Assembly: GCF_001194135.2 (NCBI RefSeq)
Contig: NC_068983.1
Location: 14,305,701 to 14,369,700 of the forward strand
Reading direction: 5' to 3'
Length of the DNA: 64,000 nt
Origin: Octopus bimaculoides
Taxonomy: Eukaryota
Of the stretch, positions 810-48,845 are shown piece after piece (positions within the stretch are counted from its first letter, which is position 1; each line of letters begins with the position of its first letter). The notes beneath the pieces were generated by a model. The model was given only the letters and a program-made list of their open reading frames with translations. It made no database searches and was not told the origin of the DNA. The position numbers and the translations under genes are program-made.

Positions 810-1231
810 CTTCTTTTACTTGTTTCAGCTGTTGGATTGCGGCCACACTGTAGCACTTCCTTGAAGGGTTTAGTCCAACAAATCGACCATAGTACTTATC
901 TGTAAGTCTGGTACTTACTCTATCATTTCTTTTGCTGAACTGCTAGGTTACGGGCAGGTAAACTCCCCAACGCCGGTTGTCAGGCTGTAGTGGGCAACAA
1001 CCCCCCACACAACACTCACTCTGTCCTCTTTCAGTCTCTCCTCTCCCTCTCTATTTCTTTCTCCTCTTTCCTTCTCTCTCTCCTCTTTCCCTCTCTCTGT
1101 CTCCTCTTTCCCTCTCACTCTCATCTTTCCTTCTCTCTCTCTCTCCTCTTTCTCTCTCCTCTTTCTCTCTCCTCTTTCTCTCTCCTCTTTCTCTCTCCTC
1201 TTTCTCTCTCCTCTTTCTCTCTCCTCTTTCC

Positions 1232-1262
<31 letters not shown>

Positions 1263-1392
1263 CTCTCTCCTCTTTCTCGCTCCTCTTTCTCTCCTCTTTC
1301 TCTCTCCTCTTTCCCTCTCTCTCTCCTCTTTTCCTCTCTCTCTCCTCTTTTCCTCTCTCTCTCCTCTTTCCCTCTCTCACTCCTCTTTCCCT

Positions 1393-1424
<32 letters not shown>

Positions 1425-1613
1425 CTCTTTCTCTCTCCTCTTTCNNNNNNNNNNNNNNNNNNNNNCTCTCTCTCTCTCTCTCTCTCCTCTTTCTCTCTCC
1501 TCTTTCTCTCTCCTCTTTCTCTCTCCTCTTTCTCTCTCTCTCTCCTCTTTTCCTCTCTCTCTCCTCTTTTCCTCTCTCTCTCTCCTCTTTCCCTCTCTCA
1601 CTCCTCTTTCCCT

Positions 1614-1645
<32 letters not shown>

Positions 1646-1970
1646 CTCTTTCTCTCTCCTCTTTCTCTCTCCTCTTTCTCTCCTCTTTCTCTCTCCTCTT
1701 TTCCTCTCTCTCTCCTCTTTTCCTCTCTCTCCTCTTTTCCTCTCTCTCTCCTCTTTTCCTCTCTCTCTCCTCTTTCCCTCTCTCTCTCTACATTCTCCCT
1801 CTTTCTCCTCGCATATACGCACGCGCGCACACATTTAGATACGACGATTTTTTTTCAGTTCCCGTCCACAAGGCTTTGGTTGGCTCGGGGCTATAGCAGG
1901 ACACCCAAAGTGGGGTCGAACCCAAGCCCACATAGTTGGGAAACAAGCATCTTAACCATACTGCCATTCC
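810..1970 (-). mobile_element. tRNA-derived SINE family A with a hugely expanded internal simple-repeat linker
   Basis: Head (1845-1970) and 3' half (810-1005) match the family-A copies at 33774 and 61223. Confidence 0.7.
1015..1810. repeat. CT-rich complex repeat (~14-mer ctctcctctttct-type units mixed with (CT)n)
   Basis: Direct reading; produces the spurious S/L/F-rich and E/R/K-rich ORFs. Confidence 0.9.
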
Positions 1971-3055
1971 ATTTACAGACCCATTCATCATACTCTATTT
2001 CTCAATTCTTCACCATTGCATTTATACAAGGACGCATGTCTTTCTCTATATGTCTCTATCTCTTCACATGCATATATACTCACAAACCCGTCCACACACG
2101 TGTACTCAAACGTATTAACTAAAGGAATCAAAACGTGCTATATACTCAAGTTACTGGTATTTCTTCATGCGGGTGATTATAATAACGAATGTAAACAATT
2201 CCTAGCTAGTCATAAAAAATTATTATTGATTATTAGTAATTATGTTTCATAACTTGGTGTTATTTTTTATAATTATGTGGTTCTATACAATTATGATTAT
2301 TATTAAAGCGGCTGCAGAAGTTTTAAATGACGTCTTGAAAGATCAATGATAATGTAATTTTTTTCTTTTATTTCTTCTACAATATGACTCTTCACATCTG
2401 TCAAAGTCACTTATAAACTTTAGGCCATATCATATAAACATTTGTTATTGTTTTTATGCTGAAGTTAACCTACGTAATGCTACAAATCGCGGTCTAAAAT
2501 ATATAGACATTGCATTCGTGTATAAATACAATACATCTTCATTAGATAGAGATACGTAACTTCATACTTATACACACACGCGCATATTTATATATATGTA
2601 TATGTGTGTGAGTGTGTATATACAAACATATATCCATATATACATAGATGTATAATACATAAACCACTATGAAATCGTCAAGATGAGGGACGTATCTGCC
2701 AATACTATATCATAAATGACGCAAAAGAGATGGGAGATATTTATTAAAAAGAAAAATAAGAATTTATTAATAAACATATACTCTCAGAGATATTTTTCTA
2801 CTGAATCTGTAAACTCATAAACGAAAAATTTTATATTATATATTATGAAAAATGTAAATATTCTCGTGCTGAATAAATATTATTACAACTTCTTAATACA
2901 TATGGTGTTTTTAAAGGTAAAACAAATTTGCTTCACTTTTAATTCTTTTCAGTTAACTGGAGAAACTGATTATTCCTTCAATATATTTTTACCATTTTAC
3001 TCGAGTTAGTTTCCCACCTCGCGATGGGAAAACACAAACACAAAGGTACACCTAC

Positions 3056-4408: not shown

Positions 4409-5289
4409 GATGTGTACTTTCAAGTGTTGAACAACGAAACAAAGTAAGGTGAGGACCGTGTTTTCAAATATTCGAACGTAAACAATATTCTATTAGGATG
4501 CCGAGTTCATGTGAAGAGATACACATTGAAAATTTGCCAAAATACTATAATGTATTAGAAAAATATACATATAAGAGATTAATGGAAATAAAGAAGTCCT
4601 TAATTATAATATGGGATATTATGGGCTTTTAGGGGTATTAAAGACAGAATGAGAGATGAAATAGATTTTTGAGGGGAAAAAACATTAATGATTTTGGGAA
4701 ATAAAAGAGAAAAATAGCTCTGTATATATTATAAGTATTAATTATTTAACATTTCTATGTACTAACATATACATTCCAATATTTAGAGATAAGTTATTGT
4801 ATACACACTACGGAGATGAATATGAATATTTATGTGAAAAAAATACTTGTGTATAGAGAAAAGTAGATTTTATGAGGGGGAAAATAACGAAAAGAGATGA
4901 AAGGGGAGGAAAGTGGGATAGGAACACAAATGATTTATCATGTGTAGTATAAGATAAAAAAAAGAAAAGAAATGGATTAAGAAATAAAAGAGAAGGGAAA
5001 ACAATTCGTTTATATTATACTACTATATTGTTTTTAGAATGTCATTTGGAGAAAAGTTATTATTTGGGATTTCAATGGAGTAAGAAATATTTTCCGTTGT
5101 TCTAAGAAAAAGTATTAAGTATATAAAATGACTATATTGCACTTACTTCTGAGCGGAATGAATATTTTTATGTCAATTTTTTTTTAATGTGATGTAGTTT
5201 ATAATAGTAATGACTAGTAATCTCCCTTTGTATATACGTATATTCCATTTAACAATGAAATAAGCATTCTTTTCTACTGTGAGCACAAT

Positions 5290-5463
5290 GTCAGAAATTT
5301 TGGTGGAGGGTGGCAGTCCATCACGCAACTGGTACTTAATTTATCGACTCCGAAAGGATGAAAAGCAAAGTCGACCTCGGCGGAATTTGAACTCAGAACG
5401 TAAAGACAGACAAAATACCGCTAATCATTTCACCTGGCGGGCTAACGTTTCCACCAGCTCGCC
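5290..5463 (-). mobile_element. tRNA-derived SINE family B inserted into the PLE endonuclease region
   Basis: Reverse complement begins ggcgagctgg... and contains the family core 'cttttcatcctttcggagtcgataaattaagtaccag'. Confidence 0.85.
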
Positions 5464-39440: not shown

Positions 39441-39848
39441 ACTCTTTTACTCTTTTACTTGTTTCAGTCTTTTGACTGTGGCCATGCTGGAGCACCGCCT
39501 TTTAGTCAAGCAAATCGACCCCAGGACTTATTCTTTAGAAGCCTAGTACTTATTCTATCGATATCTTTTGCCGAACCGCTAAGTTACGGGGACATAAACA
39601 CACCAGCATCGGTTGTCAAGCGATGTTGGGGGACAAACACACACATACAAACATACACACACACATACATACATATACATATATACGACAGGCTTCTTTC
39701 AGTTTCCGTCTACCAAATCCACTCACAAGGCTTTGGTCGGCCCGAGGCTATAGTAGAAGACACTTGCCCAAGATGCCGCGCAGTGGGACTGAACCCGGGA
39801 CCATGTGGTTGGTAAGCTAGCTACTTACCACACAGCCACTCCTACGCC
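39441..39848 (-). mobile_element. SINE family A, full length
   Basis: Reverse complement of the 33774 copy with a short linker. Confidence 0.9.
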
Positions 39849-44949: not shown

Positions 44950-45370
44950 GAAGACGTTATGTAGAAGATGTATTTGATACATATCTCGCGGTTCAAAAAG
45001 AATTTATTTACCAAAAATCACACTAGTTAACTCCTCAATTGAAAATAAAAGTCCTACAACAACCTGTCAGACCATTAATGAAATAAGTGGAAAGAAAGAA
45101 TGCATCCGAGTCAAAACTCAAAAGGAAACGCTACAAATGTGGAAAAATCACATCCAAAAACTCCAGACATGGTCGATACGTCTATATTACAAATATCAGA
45201 ACAACTCATTATCAAATGCTGGATTGGAAATAGTTCTAAAAATATCGAACTCGAACAGAGCACCTGGCCTTGATGTAATACCACATGAACTGTGGACAAC
45301 CAAGCAATTTAATGTTATTCTTTTGAAGTTCTGCAAAGGTGTATATAACCAAACAGCATATAAACAGGGG
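44950..45370 (+). mobile_element. Decayed RTE-type LINE, pre-RT/RT start
   Basis: INEISGKK...MWKNHIQKL...SNRAPGLDVIPHELWTTKQFNVILLKFCKGVYNQ (KA.G.D.IP.E motif). Confidence 0.6.
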
Positions 45371-46348
45371 CTTATAGAAGGTGATAGAAGAATTGAGAAA
45401 TTCTGTTGTGTAATTTGCTACCTCTTCTGTATATGGGATTGTATGAACTGACTTATAGATGTGATGACTTCCAGGAAGGTACTGCAGCAGCTGCTCATTA
45501 AATATATTTACAGTGCTATTGTTTGGAGCCAGTATTGCTCTTTCACACAGCCAATTGAAAATGTGATAATATTTCGACCAATGGAGGATCTCCTTTTTGG
45601 AGACATGATGTCAAGCAATATGATGTAATAAAATGAGATGACAATTGTACGATAATAATGAAATGACAATAAAAAAAGGTGAATAATATCAACAACGTAG
45701 CAAATCTTAAGAGATACATATAATGAATTGAGGTGACACTGTTATGTTAATAATTAACTATCAATAGAAAATATTAATTAATATCAATATTTTAAAAAGA
45801 TGAAAAACGTTCAGCGGATTAATCGCGCTGGATATGAGGGGGACAATCAGTTTCTGAAAGTTAGTTCGCAAAGAGTTACCTCCCTTTTCACCATAACCAA
45901 GGAACGGGTATTTTCTACTTGCAGAGGGCCCGTTCCTCATCATGTGAAAACATCTAAATCTTAGAACATAAGAAATGTATGTTCCCAGTTTGGTAAAAAT
46001 AAGTTGTGAACTTCAGAAGTAATGCAGATTTACACACACACACAACCTCACATTTATATATATATATATATAGATATAATCTGTGTATATTTAAATTAGG
46101 CACATCATTGAAAGACTAATTAACTGCGGTATACATCCTGGCCTAGAATTACTAATAGACGTACAGTGTTAAAGGACACAAAGATATATCAGTATCTGAG
46201 GAAAATCTCTCAACAGCGGTGGTGGCATTACTAAATGGCCATGTCTGACTCCTTGGTATTCATCAGCGGCGAGTATCCACTGGAAACTGCAGGCTACATA
46301 CAAATATAAACACATACACACATATGCATACAATGACGTATATAAGAA

Positions 46349-46548
46349 AGGCGGAGAGCTGGCAGAAGCGTTAGCACGCCGGGCGAAATGCTTAGCGGTA
46401 TTTCGTCTGTCTTTACCTTCTGAGTTCAAATTCCGTCGAACTCGAATTTGCCTCTCATCCTTCCGGGGTCGATAAATTAAGTACTAGATCGAATCGACTG
46501 GCCTCATCCCCCAAAATTTCGGACTTCGTGCTTAGATTTGAAAAGAAT
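46349..46548 (+). mobile_element. SINE family B
   Basis: ggcggagagctggcagaagcgttagcacgccgggcg...gagttcaaattcc...ggggtcgataaattaagtac. Confidence 0.9.
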
Positions 46549-47009
46549 GCGTGTGTACGCATAAAAGTTTTGGCCAGAGATAGAAAAAAAAAAACCTGCT
46601 ACCACGAACGACAATTCTTTGTTACAATTTGTTCCGGTTGCCCTTAGTCCCCTTCCCACAGGTCATTAAACTTATTATCAGTGCAATTCATGAACTCGAT
46701 ATAATGTACTAAAAATTCTTGCAAGTCAGTGCTCTTAGTGCGGTTTAAGTCCAATTACTGAGACCAATCAATATATTTTCTCATGAGACGTATGTTTTCA
46801 TCCGGCCCTATTAATCAGGAGTTTATGATGCTTCTAAGAATCCTAATTACTTCAAGTTCAAATGATCTCATATATAACGTATATGAAATATATGTGTAAC
46901 GTATATGAAATATATGTGTAACGTATATGAAAGTAAAGACAGCAATTTCTATATAAAAAATACTCTTTTATCTTTCGGAACTTTACTTTTAATATCTTCG
47001 CAAATGATA

Positions 47010-47194
47010 GGCGGCGAGCTGGCAAAATAGTTATCACGCCGGTCAAAACGCTTAGTGTCATCTATTCCGGCTCTTTACATTCATCGCTCAAATTCCGCCG
47101 TGGTCAATTTAGCCTTTCATTCCGTCCGAGTTGATAAAATAAGTACCATTTGAGCATTGGGGTCGATGTAATCGATTAAATATCAACCCCCACC
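47010..47194 (+). mobile_element. SINE family B
   Basis: ggcggcgagctggc head and core. Confidence 0.8.
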
Positions 47195-47705: not shown

Positions 47706-47787
47706 CCAGAGGAAATACAGCCGATGTTGTATTTGGAAATATTAACAACTGAAAATTATGACATATATATATATATATATCGAGTGG

Positions 47788-47840
47788 TCTTAACTGACGA
47801 GGCAACGGAAATTGCCGAAACTGACGTGTCAGTATTAAGA
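47788..47840 (+). ncRNA. Complete canonical type-I hammerhead ribozyme
   Basis: tcttaa-CUGACGA-ggcaa-cggaaa-ttgcc-GAA-actga-cgtg-tcagt-A-ttaaga; all core bases and three perfect stems. Confidence 0.9.
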
Positions 47841-47997
47841 ACTCTCGATCGGCACTTTTCGGACTATTATGGTCCCTGTTAGTGTCTATGTTTTCATTCA
47901 TGTGCGTTAACTACAACATTAGAGCGGTTTAGCTCTTATTTCTAACAATGTAGGTGTTTCATAACATCCTAGTCACATTTAGTGACATTTATATATA

Positions 47998-48845
47998 TAT
48001 GAAGTAGCATCAAAACTTTGCCGGACTAGTTGTGTAGTTGTGTAGCGCACCAACAGATAGCAGCACACGGTTGAATGTGCAGTGACAGCTAATAGTACCC
48101 TTCACCAGACAGTGGGCCGAGTGACATCACTATGTTTACTTCGCAAGTTCGGGAATTTGTGTTTCTTGTGGTCACGTGTATACTTTATTCTGCGATTTTT
48201 GTCATGGACAAGAAGTTGGAACGAACAGTCAAAGTGAAATTTTGCGCTAAACTTGGAAAGTCTACTACAGAGACATTGAGCATGCTTCTGCAAGCTTACA
48301 GTGACGAGGCGATGAGTCGTACGTAATTTTTCGAGTGGTACGAGGGCTTCAAAAGCGGAAAAAACGTCCCTGGAATACGATGAACGATCTGGAAGACCTG
48401 TCATGAACGTCAACTCCGGGAATGTGACGAAAAGTCATCAGCCTGTGTATGAGGGTCGTGAGAGGACTATCAGCGATTCTTTCAAACGTTTGAGAAAAGA
48501 AATACGGCGAAAGCGACAGGATCATTGGAGTGCAAAGAAATGGATTCTTCTCGACAACAGGGCACCCTGTCACTGACTGTCTCCTTCGTGAACCTCTCGC
48601 CAAAAACAACCTGGTATCGCTTCTGCACCCACCCTATTCGGTATATTTAGCACCTTCGGCCTTCCATCTCTTCTCCAAGATGTATATGCAGCTCAAAAGC
48701 TTGCCGTGTTAGCACTGTTGGCGAGAGCCCCAGCGAATCATAGGACGTCTTCAACTCACGTATGGAAAACGACTTCCAGGCCGGACTCCAGAATTGGTAG
48801 GAATGCTAGGACCGGTGTATATCTGCGCAAGGTGACTAACATGTA
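47998..48845 (+). mobile_element. Internally deleted mariner
   Basis: ATG at 48204: MDKKLERTVKVKFCAKLGKSTTETLSMLLQAYSDEAMSRT*FFEW...DERSGRP; later DNRAP and HPPYSVYLAPSAFHLF. Confidence 0.85.

What the first reader, a model, noticed from the sequence alone, without database searches (positions are those of the whole stretch)
47779..47849. Textbook, apparently intact type-I hammerhead ribozyme in a ~210-bp (TA)n-flanked unit
Seen: canonical CUGACGA and GAAA cores; perfect stems I (6 bp), II (5 bp, loop CGGAAA) and III (5 bp, loop CGUG); GUA site with predicted cleavage 3' of 47834. Stem I extends to ~15 bp through an internal loop (atcgag/ctcgat). Established: loop II-stem I bulge contacts give fast cleavage at physiological Mg2+. 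Unlike minimal PLE HHRs, it has a stable stem III and should work as a monomer. Inference: a young retrozyme-like element or a domesticated ribozyme; its parent element is not in the window.
Basis: partly seen in the sequence, partly recalled or inferred. Interest (0 to 1): 0.85.

Follow-up and report, generated by a model that had tools for sequence, protein, structure and literature searches.

The report
Solo type-I hammerhead ribozyme unit
The window holds one complete, canonical-looking self-cleaving hammerhead ribozyme motif at the start of a roughly 200-bp structured insert in a (TA)n microsatellite; it is most likely a stranded single copy of a ribozyme-carrying mobile element, a kind already known in animal genomes.

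Summary
Window 47788-47840 (+) encodes a complete type-I hammerhead (HHR). It has the CUGACGA and GAA cores, A15.1-U16.1, and a GUA site cut after 47834. Helices I, II and III have 6, 5 and 5 Watson-Crick pairs, and helix I extends to 47779/47849. It is the only HHR of any topology in the window. None of 1000 shuffles and none of 1e9 random bases gave a motif this good.

Rfam does not call it: the best scores are 15.9-17.4 bits against gathering scores of 48-56. A nearest-neighbour rod fold is 3.5 kcal/mol more stable than the active fold.

The HHR opens a 202-bp, 40.6% GC insert with an unusually structured tail. The insert sits between TGACAT(TA)n direct repeats in a TE-rich, (TA)n-rich draft eukaryotic assembly. 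There is no second copy, no tandem partner and no Penelope-like RT/GIY-YIG signature in the window. No relatives were found in any searchable collection.

Best reading (0.55): a solo, retrozyme-like or PLE-derived insertion that can cut a read-through transcript once but cannot make a circle. This is a new member of a known kind and of modest interest. Activity, copy number and host species remain untested.

The parts
47759..47780 (.). Left flanking direct repeat TGACAT(AT)8. It is a candidate target-site duplication, or terminal redundancy of a more-than-unit copy.
   Evidence: (families D1/D2). Only TGAC is non-microsatellite sequence, so the evidence is suggestive (p roughly 0.01).
47779..47787 (+). 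Distal helix I, 5' strand: atcgag pairs with 47844-49 and G47786 pairs with C47842. U47785 and G47787 face U47843 and A47841 as 1x1 mismatches.
47788..47793 (+). Proximal helix I, 5' strand (positions 2.6-2.1), tcttaa
47794..47800 (+). Catalytic core C3 U4 G5 A6 C7 G8 A9 (CUGACGA)
   Evidence: aligned to the CUGAUGA core of Hammerhead_3 and RAGATH-1-hammerhead
47801..47816 (+). Helix II hairpin: ggcaa/ttgcc (5 bp, G10.1-C11.1) with 6-nt loop CGGAAA
47817..47819 (+). Core G12 A13 A14
47820..47833 (+). Helix III hairpin: A15.1-U16.1, C15.2-G16.2, U-A, G-C, A-U (5 bp) with loop CGUG. Its 3' arm can alternatively pair with core nucleotides 47793-99, because AACTGACG is repeated at 47792-99 and 47819-26.
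   Evidence: D8
47834..47835 (+). A17 | U1.1: predicted self-cleavage site (GUA, cut 3' of 47834)
   Evidence: Position in the motif. Cleavage itself is not tested.
47835..47849 (+). Helix I 3' strand: ttaaga (1.1-1.6), then a-C-t, then ctcgat
47850..47982 (+). Non-ribozyme tail of the insert, predicted to form three hairpins (about 47851-86, 47888-967, 47972-86)
   Evidence: z = -3.6 to -4.0, which is in the top 1-2% of 160 random 140-nt windows of the same sequence
47983..48000 (.). Right flanking direct repeat TGACAT-T-(TA)5T, 17/18 identical to the start of the left repeat

Best explanation
Window 47781-47982 is a single ('solo') copy of a small, non-coding retroelement that carries a hammerhead ribozyme. 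It resembles a metazoan non-LTR retrozyme monomer or a derivative of a Penelope-like element (PLE) terminal repeat, inserted into a (TA)n microsatellite.

How it would work, if a read-through transcript crosses it on the + strand:
- Helices II and III form first, while the RNA is being made.
- Helix I (6 bp, extended to 13 bp) then closes the three-way junction.
- The core catalyses transesterification 3' of A47834, leaving a 2',3'-cyclic phosphate on the upstream fragment and a 5'-OH on the downstream fragment.

There is only one ribozyme, so no unit-length RNA and no circle can be released. This copy is therefore a dead-end product of transposition rather than an active source element.

What is shown: the motif, its rarity by chance, the insert boundaries and repeats, the structured tail, and the transposon-rich context. 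What is inferred: catalytic activity, retroelement origin, mobilisation by PLE machinery, and recent age.
For: The HHR is complete and is the only one in the window. A motif this good appeared in 0 of 1000 shuffles and 0 times in 1e9 random bases. All 16 proximal pairs are Watson-Crick and the G10.1-C11.1 and C15.2-G16.2 pairs are present. In growing-chain minimum-free-energy folds, helices II and III are kept until base 47838. The insert is 202 bp and 40.6% GC, inside the 170-400 nt, below-50% GC range of metazoan retrozymes (PMC7229834). Its tail is unusually self-paired, z -3.6 to -4.0, in the top 1-2% of local background. The 5' end of the extended HHR coincides exactly with the end of a (TA)9 run, and the insert is bracketed by TGACAT(TA)n direct repeats that are 17/18 identical. 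(TA)n is a documented preferred target of PLEs (PMC8557442). Solo retrozyme monomers dispersed through genomes are documented (bioRxiv 10.64898/2026.07.22.740005). The neighbourhood is a mosaic of transposable elements: SINE-like copies and a Mos1-type mariner remnant that starts directly after the right repeat.
Against: No second copy of the unit and no tandem partner occur in the 64 kb, whereas two SINE-like families have 5-7 copies each. No relative was found anywhere, so multi-copy status, which is the core of any mobile-element claim, is unproven. Only 4 nt (TGAC) of the flanking repeat are non-microsatellite sequence, and (TA)n runs occur about once per 1.1 kb (53 in 58.8 kb). No RT YxDD or GIY-YIG signature is in the window. 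Rfam models do not reach their gathering scores. The nearest-neighbour model prefers an inactive rod (-23.0 against -19.5 kcal/mol). Helix III (5 bp) is atypical for metazoan retrozyme HHRs, which usually have 1-2 bp.
Confidence: 0.55

Rival explanations
1. It is a heavily 5'-truncated remnant of an autonomous Penelope-like element. In that case only the ribozyme-bearing terminal repeat (pLTR) region survived insertion into the (TA)n run, and the unit is not a dedicated non-autonomous retrozyme.
For: [quoted passage not shown] Retrozyme consensus sequences are homologous to PLE termini (bioRxiv 10.64898/2026.07.22.740005). The insert has no poly(A) tail.
Against: Metazoan PLE HHRs are minimal, with helix III of 0-2 bp and a long helix II of 6-8 bp, and they act as dimers (PMC4209133). 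This motif has a 5-bp helix III and a 5-bp helix II. No RT or GIY-YIG signature is found anywhere in the window.
Confidence: 0.15
2. It is a host-retained ('domesticated') single-copy ribozyme that cleaves a host transcript in cis, like the intronic HH9/HH10 ribozymes of amniotes.
For: It is a single copy in the window, with intact core and stems and a helix III long enough for monomeric action. Isolated HHRs with host roles are known in amniotes (cited in PMC7229834).
Against: No gene, exon or conserved element was detected around it. The neighbourhood is SINEs, a dead mariner and microsatellites. The flanking direct repeats suggest a recent insertion. No orthologue could be examined.
Confidence: 0.1
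3. It is a chance match: a hairpin-rich, AT-rich sequence that happens to satisfy the hammerhead descriptor and has no ribozyme history.
For: Extrapolating one search gives about 4e-10 per base for a bare 6/5/5 motif with G-U allowed. That is about 1-2 per multi-Gb genome if the whole genome was screened. Rfam models score it far below their gathering scores. There is no homologue to show covariation.
Against: The window-level expectation is below 0.001. All 16 pairs are Watson-Crick. There are 7 further pairs extending helix I. The conserved G10.1-C11.1 and C15.2-G16.2 pairs are present. The motif sits exactly at the edge of a repeat-bracketed insert with a structured tail.
Confidence: 0.1
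4. It is a tandem retrozyme array collapsed to one unit by the draft assembly.
For: The assembly is a draft with 5156 N, and gaps usually start at (TA)n runs. Short-read assemblies collapse tandem repeats (PMC8557442 notes this for PLEs).
Against: There is no gap within about 870 bp of the unit. Both junctions run into unique sequence, and the flanks differ: unique DNA on the left and a mariner remnant on the right.
Confidence: 0.05

Closest known systems
Canonical metazoan type-I hammerhead ribozymes (newt satellite 2, Schistosoma Sm-alpha, cave cricket; Rfam Hammerhead_1, clan CL00010)
   Same: Same topology, with helix I open. Same 15 core positions, a 6-bp proximal helix I followed by non-canonical positions, a short helix II with a 6-nt loop, G10.1-C11.1, C15.2-G16.2 and a NUH cleavage triplet (architecture as summarised in PMC4209133).
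   Different: Helix III is 5 bp with a tetraloop, where most metazoan HHRs have 1-2 bp. Helix II is 5 bp rather than 4. C is at variable position 7. No Rfam model reaches its gathering score. The loop-loop contact nucleotides could not be verified.
Metazoan non-LTR retrozymes (Cervera and de la Pena 2020, PMC7229834) and their 'solo' monomers (bioRxiv 10.64898/2026.07.22.740005)
   Same: Type-I HHR inside a non-coding unit of about 200 bp with low GC and strongly self-paired RNA. Flanking repeats are longer than 4 bp. Dispersed monomers are a described category.
   Different: The defining tandem arrangement (two or more units) and high copy number are not seen here. circRNA production is impossible from one HHR. 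Family membership cannot be shown without other copies.
Minimal hammerheads in the pLTRs of Penelope-like elements (Cervera and de la Pena 2014, PMC4209133; Craig et al. 2021, PMC8557442)
   Same: Type-I topology, retroelement context, and (TA)n microsatellite as insertion target.
   Different: PLE HHRs lack a stable helix III and cleave only as dimers. They have a 6-8 bp helix II with a bulged base, and they sit next to an RT/GIY-YIG ORF. None of these applies here.
Sm-alpha / Sj-alpha SINE-like retroposons of schistosomes carrying an active HHR (from my own knowledge: Ferbeyre et al. 1998; Laha et al. 2000)
   Same: Short, dispersed, non-coding retroposon copies with a monomer-competent type-I HHR.
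   Different: Those elements are highly repeated and have pol III promoter boxes. I saw no A/B-box match in 47779-47982 by eye, and copy number is unknown.
Amniote intronic HH9/HH10 ribozymes (isolated, conserved host copies)
   Same: An isolated single type-I motif, not in tandem.
   Different: Those are ultraconserved within introns of identified genes. Here no gene or conservation is demonstrable, and the flanks look like a fresh insertion.

Membership tests
Hammerhead ribozyme, type I | Conserved core: C3 U4 G5 A6 N7 G8 A9, G12 A13 A14, A15.1-U16.1, H17 | tested here: met
   CUGACGA 47794-800, GAA 47817-19, A47820-U47833, A47834
Hammerhead ribozyme, type I | Three helices around the core, with helix I open-ended and helices II and III closed by loops | tested here: met
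   Helices of 6/5/5 Watson-Crick pairs. The only hit in the window of my descriptor; no type II or III motif.
Hammerhead ribozyme, type I | Score at or above the gathering threshold of an Rfam hammerhead covariance model | tested here: not met
   No hit at gathering scores. Hammerhead_3 scores 17.4 bits against 48.5 and RAGATH-1-hammerhead 15.9 against 56.3. Any Hammerhead_1 score is hidden by clan competition and is therefore at most 17.4.
Hammerhead ribozyme, type I | Tertiary contact between loop II and the helix I internal loop | not testable with these tools
   The geometry is compatible: a 6-nt loop II, and G.A and U.U mismatches after 6 bp of helix I. No homologues or 3D modelling were available.
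Hammerhead ribozyme, type I | Site-specific self-cleavage | not testable with these tools
   This needs in vitro transcription. The nearest-neighbour model puts the active fold at -19.5 against the rod at -23.0 kcal/mol, but helices II and III form first in growing-chain folds.
Metazoan non-LTR retrozyme | Head-to-tail tandem of at least two HHR-containing units | tested here: not met
   One unit only, and no second HHR or unit copy in 64 kb
Metazoan non-LTR retrozyme | Unit of about 170-400 bp, GC below 50%, non-coding | tested here: met
   202 bp and 40.6% GC. ORFs over it have no homologues or Pfam hits.
Metazoan non-LTR retrozyme | Highly self-paired unit RNA | tested here: met
   Unit z -3.2, tail z -3.6 to -4.0, and circular form z -3.4, against a local background mean of -0.2
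Metazoan non-LTR retrozyme | Multi-copy family in the genome, expressed as circRNA | not testable with these tools
   The source genome is not searchable. All collection scans were empty or unrelated.
Penelope-like element (pLTR hammerhead) | Minimal HHR (helix III absent or 1-2 bp, long helix II) acting as a dimer | tested here: not met
   Helix III is 5 bp and helix II is 5 bp, compared with the description in PMC4209133
Penelope-like element (pLTR hammerhead) | Adjacent RT plus GIY-YIG endonuclease ORF | tested here: not met
   No GIY-YIG or DKG motif. The only YxDD match (54825-54839) sits in a stop-ridden frame. Pfam is empty for neighbouring ORFs. This was a crude scan only.
Penelope-like element (pLTR hammerhead) | Insertion into (TA)n microsatellite targets | tested here: met
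   (TA)9 abuts the 5' end and T(TA)5T abuts the 3' end. However, (TA)n runs are frequent here: 53 in 58.8 kb.

The most novel reading that the evidence does not exclude
The unit is a live member of a low-copy retrozyme family whose hammerhead works as a monomer, in what is probably a cephalopod or other mollusc genome; alternatively, it is a host-retained copy. In this reading the 8-nt duplication AACUGACG (47792-99 and 47819-26) acts as a built-in conformational switch. Helix III forms during transcription, giving the active ribozyme. Its 3' arm later re-pairs with the catalytic core, giving an inactive rod that protects the processed or ligated RNA. That would be a viroid-like cleavage/ligation switch in an animal element.
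Probability: 0.1. Interest if true: 0.55.

Novelty: new member of a known kind. Interest (0 to 1): 0.3.

Why it matters
If it is active, this is one more animal hammerhead, with two useful peculiarities. First, it has a long helix III that should allow cleavage as a monomer, where most metazoan HHRs need a partner copy. Second, it has a cleanly bounded solo insertion in a (TA)n microsatellite. Both bear on how retrozymes are mobilised (by Penelope-like element machinery, with or without rolling-circle copies) and on what happens to their dead-end progeny. It does not open a new class of system. Type-I hammerheads and retrozyme monomers are well documented in animal genomes.

Tried and rejected
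1. Rfam at gathering scores over the whole window gave nothing. E-value mode on 501 nt showed no hammerhead family. On 81 nt it gave only sub-threshold partial matches.

2. I looked for paralogues and for the host species through the protein collection, using the 78-aa ORF across the HHR, a mariner-like C-terminus and a helitron-like fragment. The organism therefore could not be identified with tools. My impression that the SINEs look like octopus SINEs comes from memory only, and a literal search of papers for a SINE 15-mer found nothing.

3. DNA pattern scans of metagenome contigs, viral contigs and prokaryotic genomes gave either nothing or 26 loci. The matches share only the fixed letters, show no similarity beyond them to this motif's loop II, helix I or helix III, and look like coding sequence. 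They were rejected as relatives.

4. Pfam on nine neighbouring ORFs gave nothing at E<=0.01. Only a frame-joined mariner N-terminus hit HTH_48.

5. A regex scan for RT, GIY-YIG and DKG motifs found no PLE.

6. The supplement of PMC7229834 contains no octopus or cephalopod entry and no matching core string.

7. A DNA search pattern of mine had the wrong spacer length and returned zero. It should be disregarded.

8. My automated flank-sharing test did not register the pair of interest because of a run-edge offset. It only gave a background of a few non-microsatellite 6-mer coincidences among 4005 flank pairs.

9. The SNORD34-like hit in the tail (19 bits, E 0.64) was rejected as chance.

10. By eye, only AGTGG of the box A consensus is present, so a pol III A/B-box reading of the unit was rejected.

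Full report
**Observation.**
- Helix I is tcttaa (47788-93) paired with ttaaga (47835-40).
- The core C3-A9 is CUGACGA (47794-800).
- Helix II is ggcaa/ttgcc (47801-05 / 47812-16) with loop CGGAAA.
- G12 A13 A14 are at 47817-19.
- Helix III is A15.1-U16.1 plus CUGA/UCAG (47820-24 / 47829-33) with loop CGUG.
- A17 is at 47834, so cleavage is predicted between 47834 and 47835 (GUA triplet).
- Helix I continues through G47787.A47841, G47786-C47842 and U47785.U47843 into atcgag/ctcgat (47779-84 / 47844-49). That is 13 pairs over 15 positions.

A descriptor I wrote finds this as the only type-I hammerhead on either strand, even with stems relaxed to 3/3/2 pairs. There is no type II or type III motif in the window.

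**Chance.** In 1000 dinucleotide-preserving shuffles of the window, the relaxed motif occurred 87 times, the 4/4/3 motif 5 times and the observed 6/5/5 grade never. In 1e9 random bases with the window's composition there were 42 motifs at 4/4/3 and none at 6/5/5.

Extrapolating by about 0.39 per extra pair gives roughly 4e-10 per base. A bare 6/5/5 motif (G-U allowed) is therefore expected once or twice in a multi-Gb genome. So the bare motif alone would not exclude chance if this was the best hit of a whole-genome screen. Three things make chance unlikely all the same:
- all 16 pairs are Watson-Crick;
- seven more pairs extend helix I;
- the conserved G10.1-C11.1 and C15.2-G16.2 pairs are present.

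I put chance at about 0.1.

**Curated models.** Rfam gives no match at gathering scores anywhere in the window. On an 81-nt slice in E-value mode, the best are Hammerhead_3 and RAGATH-1-hammerhead. Hammerhead_3 scores 17.4 bits (core plus helix II only, gathering score 48.5). RAGATH-1-hammerhead scores 15.9 bits (aligned through helix I, core, helix II, GAAAC, helix III, the GU-H triplet and helix I; gathering score 56.3). Clan competition hides any lower Hammerhead_1 score. This membership criterion was tested and not met, and I record it as such. From my own knowledge of hammerhead surveys, HHR covariance models carry little information and descriptor searches are the field's usual tool.

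**Folding.** The nearest-neighbour model gives the hammerhead secondary structure -19.5 kcal/mol. A rod in which ACUGACG of the core pairs with the 3' arm of helix III scores -23.0. The rod is possible because AACTGACG occurs twice, at 47792-99 and 47819-26 (D8). In growing-chain folds, helices II and III are the minimum-energy structure up to base 47838, and the rod takes over only once the 3' strand of helix I is made. I infer that the active fold is kinetically accessible during transcription and that the rod is a competing inactive state. The energy model ignores the tertiary structure of the core. This remains an inference.

**The unit and its edges.** The 5' base of the extended helix I abuts a (TA)9 run (47763-80). 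A second run lies at 47990-48000. The flanks form a direct repeat, TGACAT(AT)8 (47759-80) and TGACAT-T-(TA)5T (47983-48000), which is 17/18 identical over the shorter copy. This delimits a 202-bp insert at 47781-47982 with 40.6% GC.

Only TGAC is non-microsatellite sequence, and (TA)n runs are frequent: 53 runs in 58.8 kb. I therefore rate the repeat as suggestive (p about 0.01; one search gives only a rough background). It could be a target-site duplication. It could equally be the terminal redundancy of a slightly more-than-unit copy of a circular template that itself contains TGACAT(TA)n.

The 140-nt tail after the ribozyme is unusually structured, z -3.6 to -4.0. Among 160 random 140-nt windows of the same sequence, 1.9% reach -3.5 and 0.6% reach -4. 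An upstream control has z -0.4.

**Context.** The window is a draft eukaryotic assembly: 5156 N, about 35% GC, and full of microsatellites and interspersed repeats.
- Two SINE-like families have 5-7 copies each, including 46340-46545 and 47006-47146 just upstream.
- Directly after the right repeat, 48001-48834 is a decayed Mos1-type mariner (HTH_48, E 3e-8 when two frames are joined). It is followed by another (TA)n run and a gap.
- The unit and both of its unique flanks have no other copy in the window.
- A motif scan finds no GIY-YIG or DKG signature, and the only YxDD match lies in a stop-ridden frame.

**Relatives.** I found none. The protein collection has nothing for the ORF across the ribozyme or for two transposon fragments. 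As a result the host species could not be identified with tools. Pattern scans of metagenomic, viral and prokaryotic collections gave nothing or only unrelated matches that look like coding sequence. Copy number, covariation and orthology therefore remain untested.

**Comparison with the literature.**
[quoted passage not shown] That short helix III forces them to act as dimers. PLE hammerheads are more minimal still (PMC4209133).
- Most canonical type-I HHRs of animals lie in 170-400 bp, low-GC, highly self-paired tandem units called non-LTR retrozymes. These are expressed as circRNAs, probably mobilised by PLEs, and have target-site duplications longer than 4 bp when such duplications are present (PMC7229834).
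- Solo monomers dispersed along chromosomes are described and are interpreted as non-transposing progeny (bioRxiv 10.64898/2026.07.22.740005).
- PLEs show an insertion bias for microsatellites, with (TA)n marked as a preferred target (PMC8557442).
- Hammerhead_1 hits number 235 in the giant squid genome (PMC6962438).

The present unit fits the size, composition, structure and target of this picture. It differs in having a single copy and a 5-bp helix III.

**Mechanism proposed.** A read-through + strand transcript folds helices II and III and then helix I, and cuts itself after A47834. With a single ribozyme it cannot release a unit-length RNA or form a circle, so this locus is a dead-end copy. 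The motif and the anatomy are shown. Catalysis, retroelement origin and PLE mobilisation are inferred.

**Rivals.**

| Reading | Confidence |
|---|---|
| Solo retrozyme-like or PLE-derived insertion (preferred) | 0.55 |
| 5'-truncated PLE terminus | 0.15 |
| Host-retained ribozyme | 0.1 |
| Chance | 0.1 |
| Collapsed tandem array | 0.05 |

**Verdict.** This is a new member of a known kind, with interest about 0.3. Its value lies in a monomer-type helix III, a possible core/helix III switch and a cleanly bounded (TA)n insertion. It is not a new class of system.

Noticed in passing
window 46340-46545 (+), with copies at 5269-5463 (-), 24657-24865 (-), 24968-25107 (-), 39064-39181 (-), 47006-47146 (+), 26903-26976 (-): A SINE-like interspersed repeat family with 7 copies at 72-82% identity. 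From memory it resembles cephalopod (octopus) SINEs, but this was not verifiable with the tools.
   Followed up: partly
window 39560-39815 (+), with copies at 33806-34286 (-), 61257-61709 (-), 54002-54129 (-), 32688-32784 (+): A second interspersed repeat family at 76-93% identity. Several copies are interrupted by an internal TA/CA microsatellite and an assembly gap.
   Followed up: partly
window 48001-48834 (+): A decayed Mos1-type mariner element (HTH_48, E 3e-8 after joining two frames; frameshifts and stops). It starts right after the (TA)n run that ends the hammerhead unit and ends at another (TA)n run plus a gap. The (TA)n tract therefore looks like a nest for at least two insertions.
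   Followed up: partly
window 44978-45610 and 55832-56349: By eye, a LINE-type RT N-terminal fragment (APGLDVIP, + strand), an overlapping helitron/PIF1-like helicase fragment (- strand) and a mariner-like transposase C-terminus (- strand). None reached Pfam E<=0.01 or found homologues.
   Followed up: partly
whole window: There are 53 (TA)n runs of at least 10 nt in 58.8 kb of called sequence. Many of the N gaps (5156 N in total) begin directly at a (TA)n or (CA)n run, so the assembly seems to break at microsatellites.
   Followed up: partly
window 47792-47799 and 47819-47826: An 8-nt direct repeat, AACTGACG, lies inside the ribozyme. It lets the 3' arm of helix III pair with the catalytic core, giving an alternative rod 3.5 kcal/mol more stable than the active fold.
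   Followed up: yes
window 47905-47977 (-): A weak SNORD34-like covariance-model match (19 bits against a gathering score of 38, E 0.64) inside the tail of the unit. I judged it chance.
   Followed up: no
window 46862-46930 (+): About three tandem copies of a 22-nt unit (aacgtatatgaaatatatgtgt) between the two upstream SINE-like copies.
   Followed up: no
window 977-2122: A long CT-rich low-complexity tract (Ser/Leu-rich in the + frames, Arg/Glu-rich in the - frame) that produces spurious ORFs of 260-380 codons.
   Followed up: no
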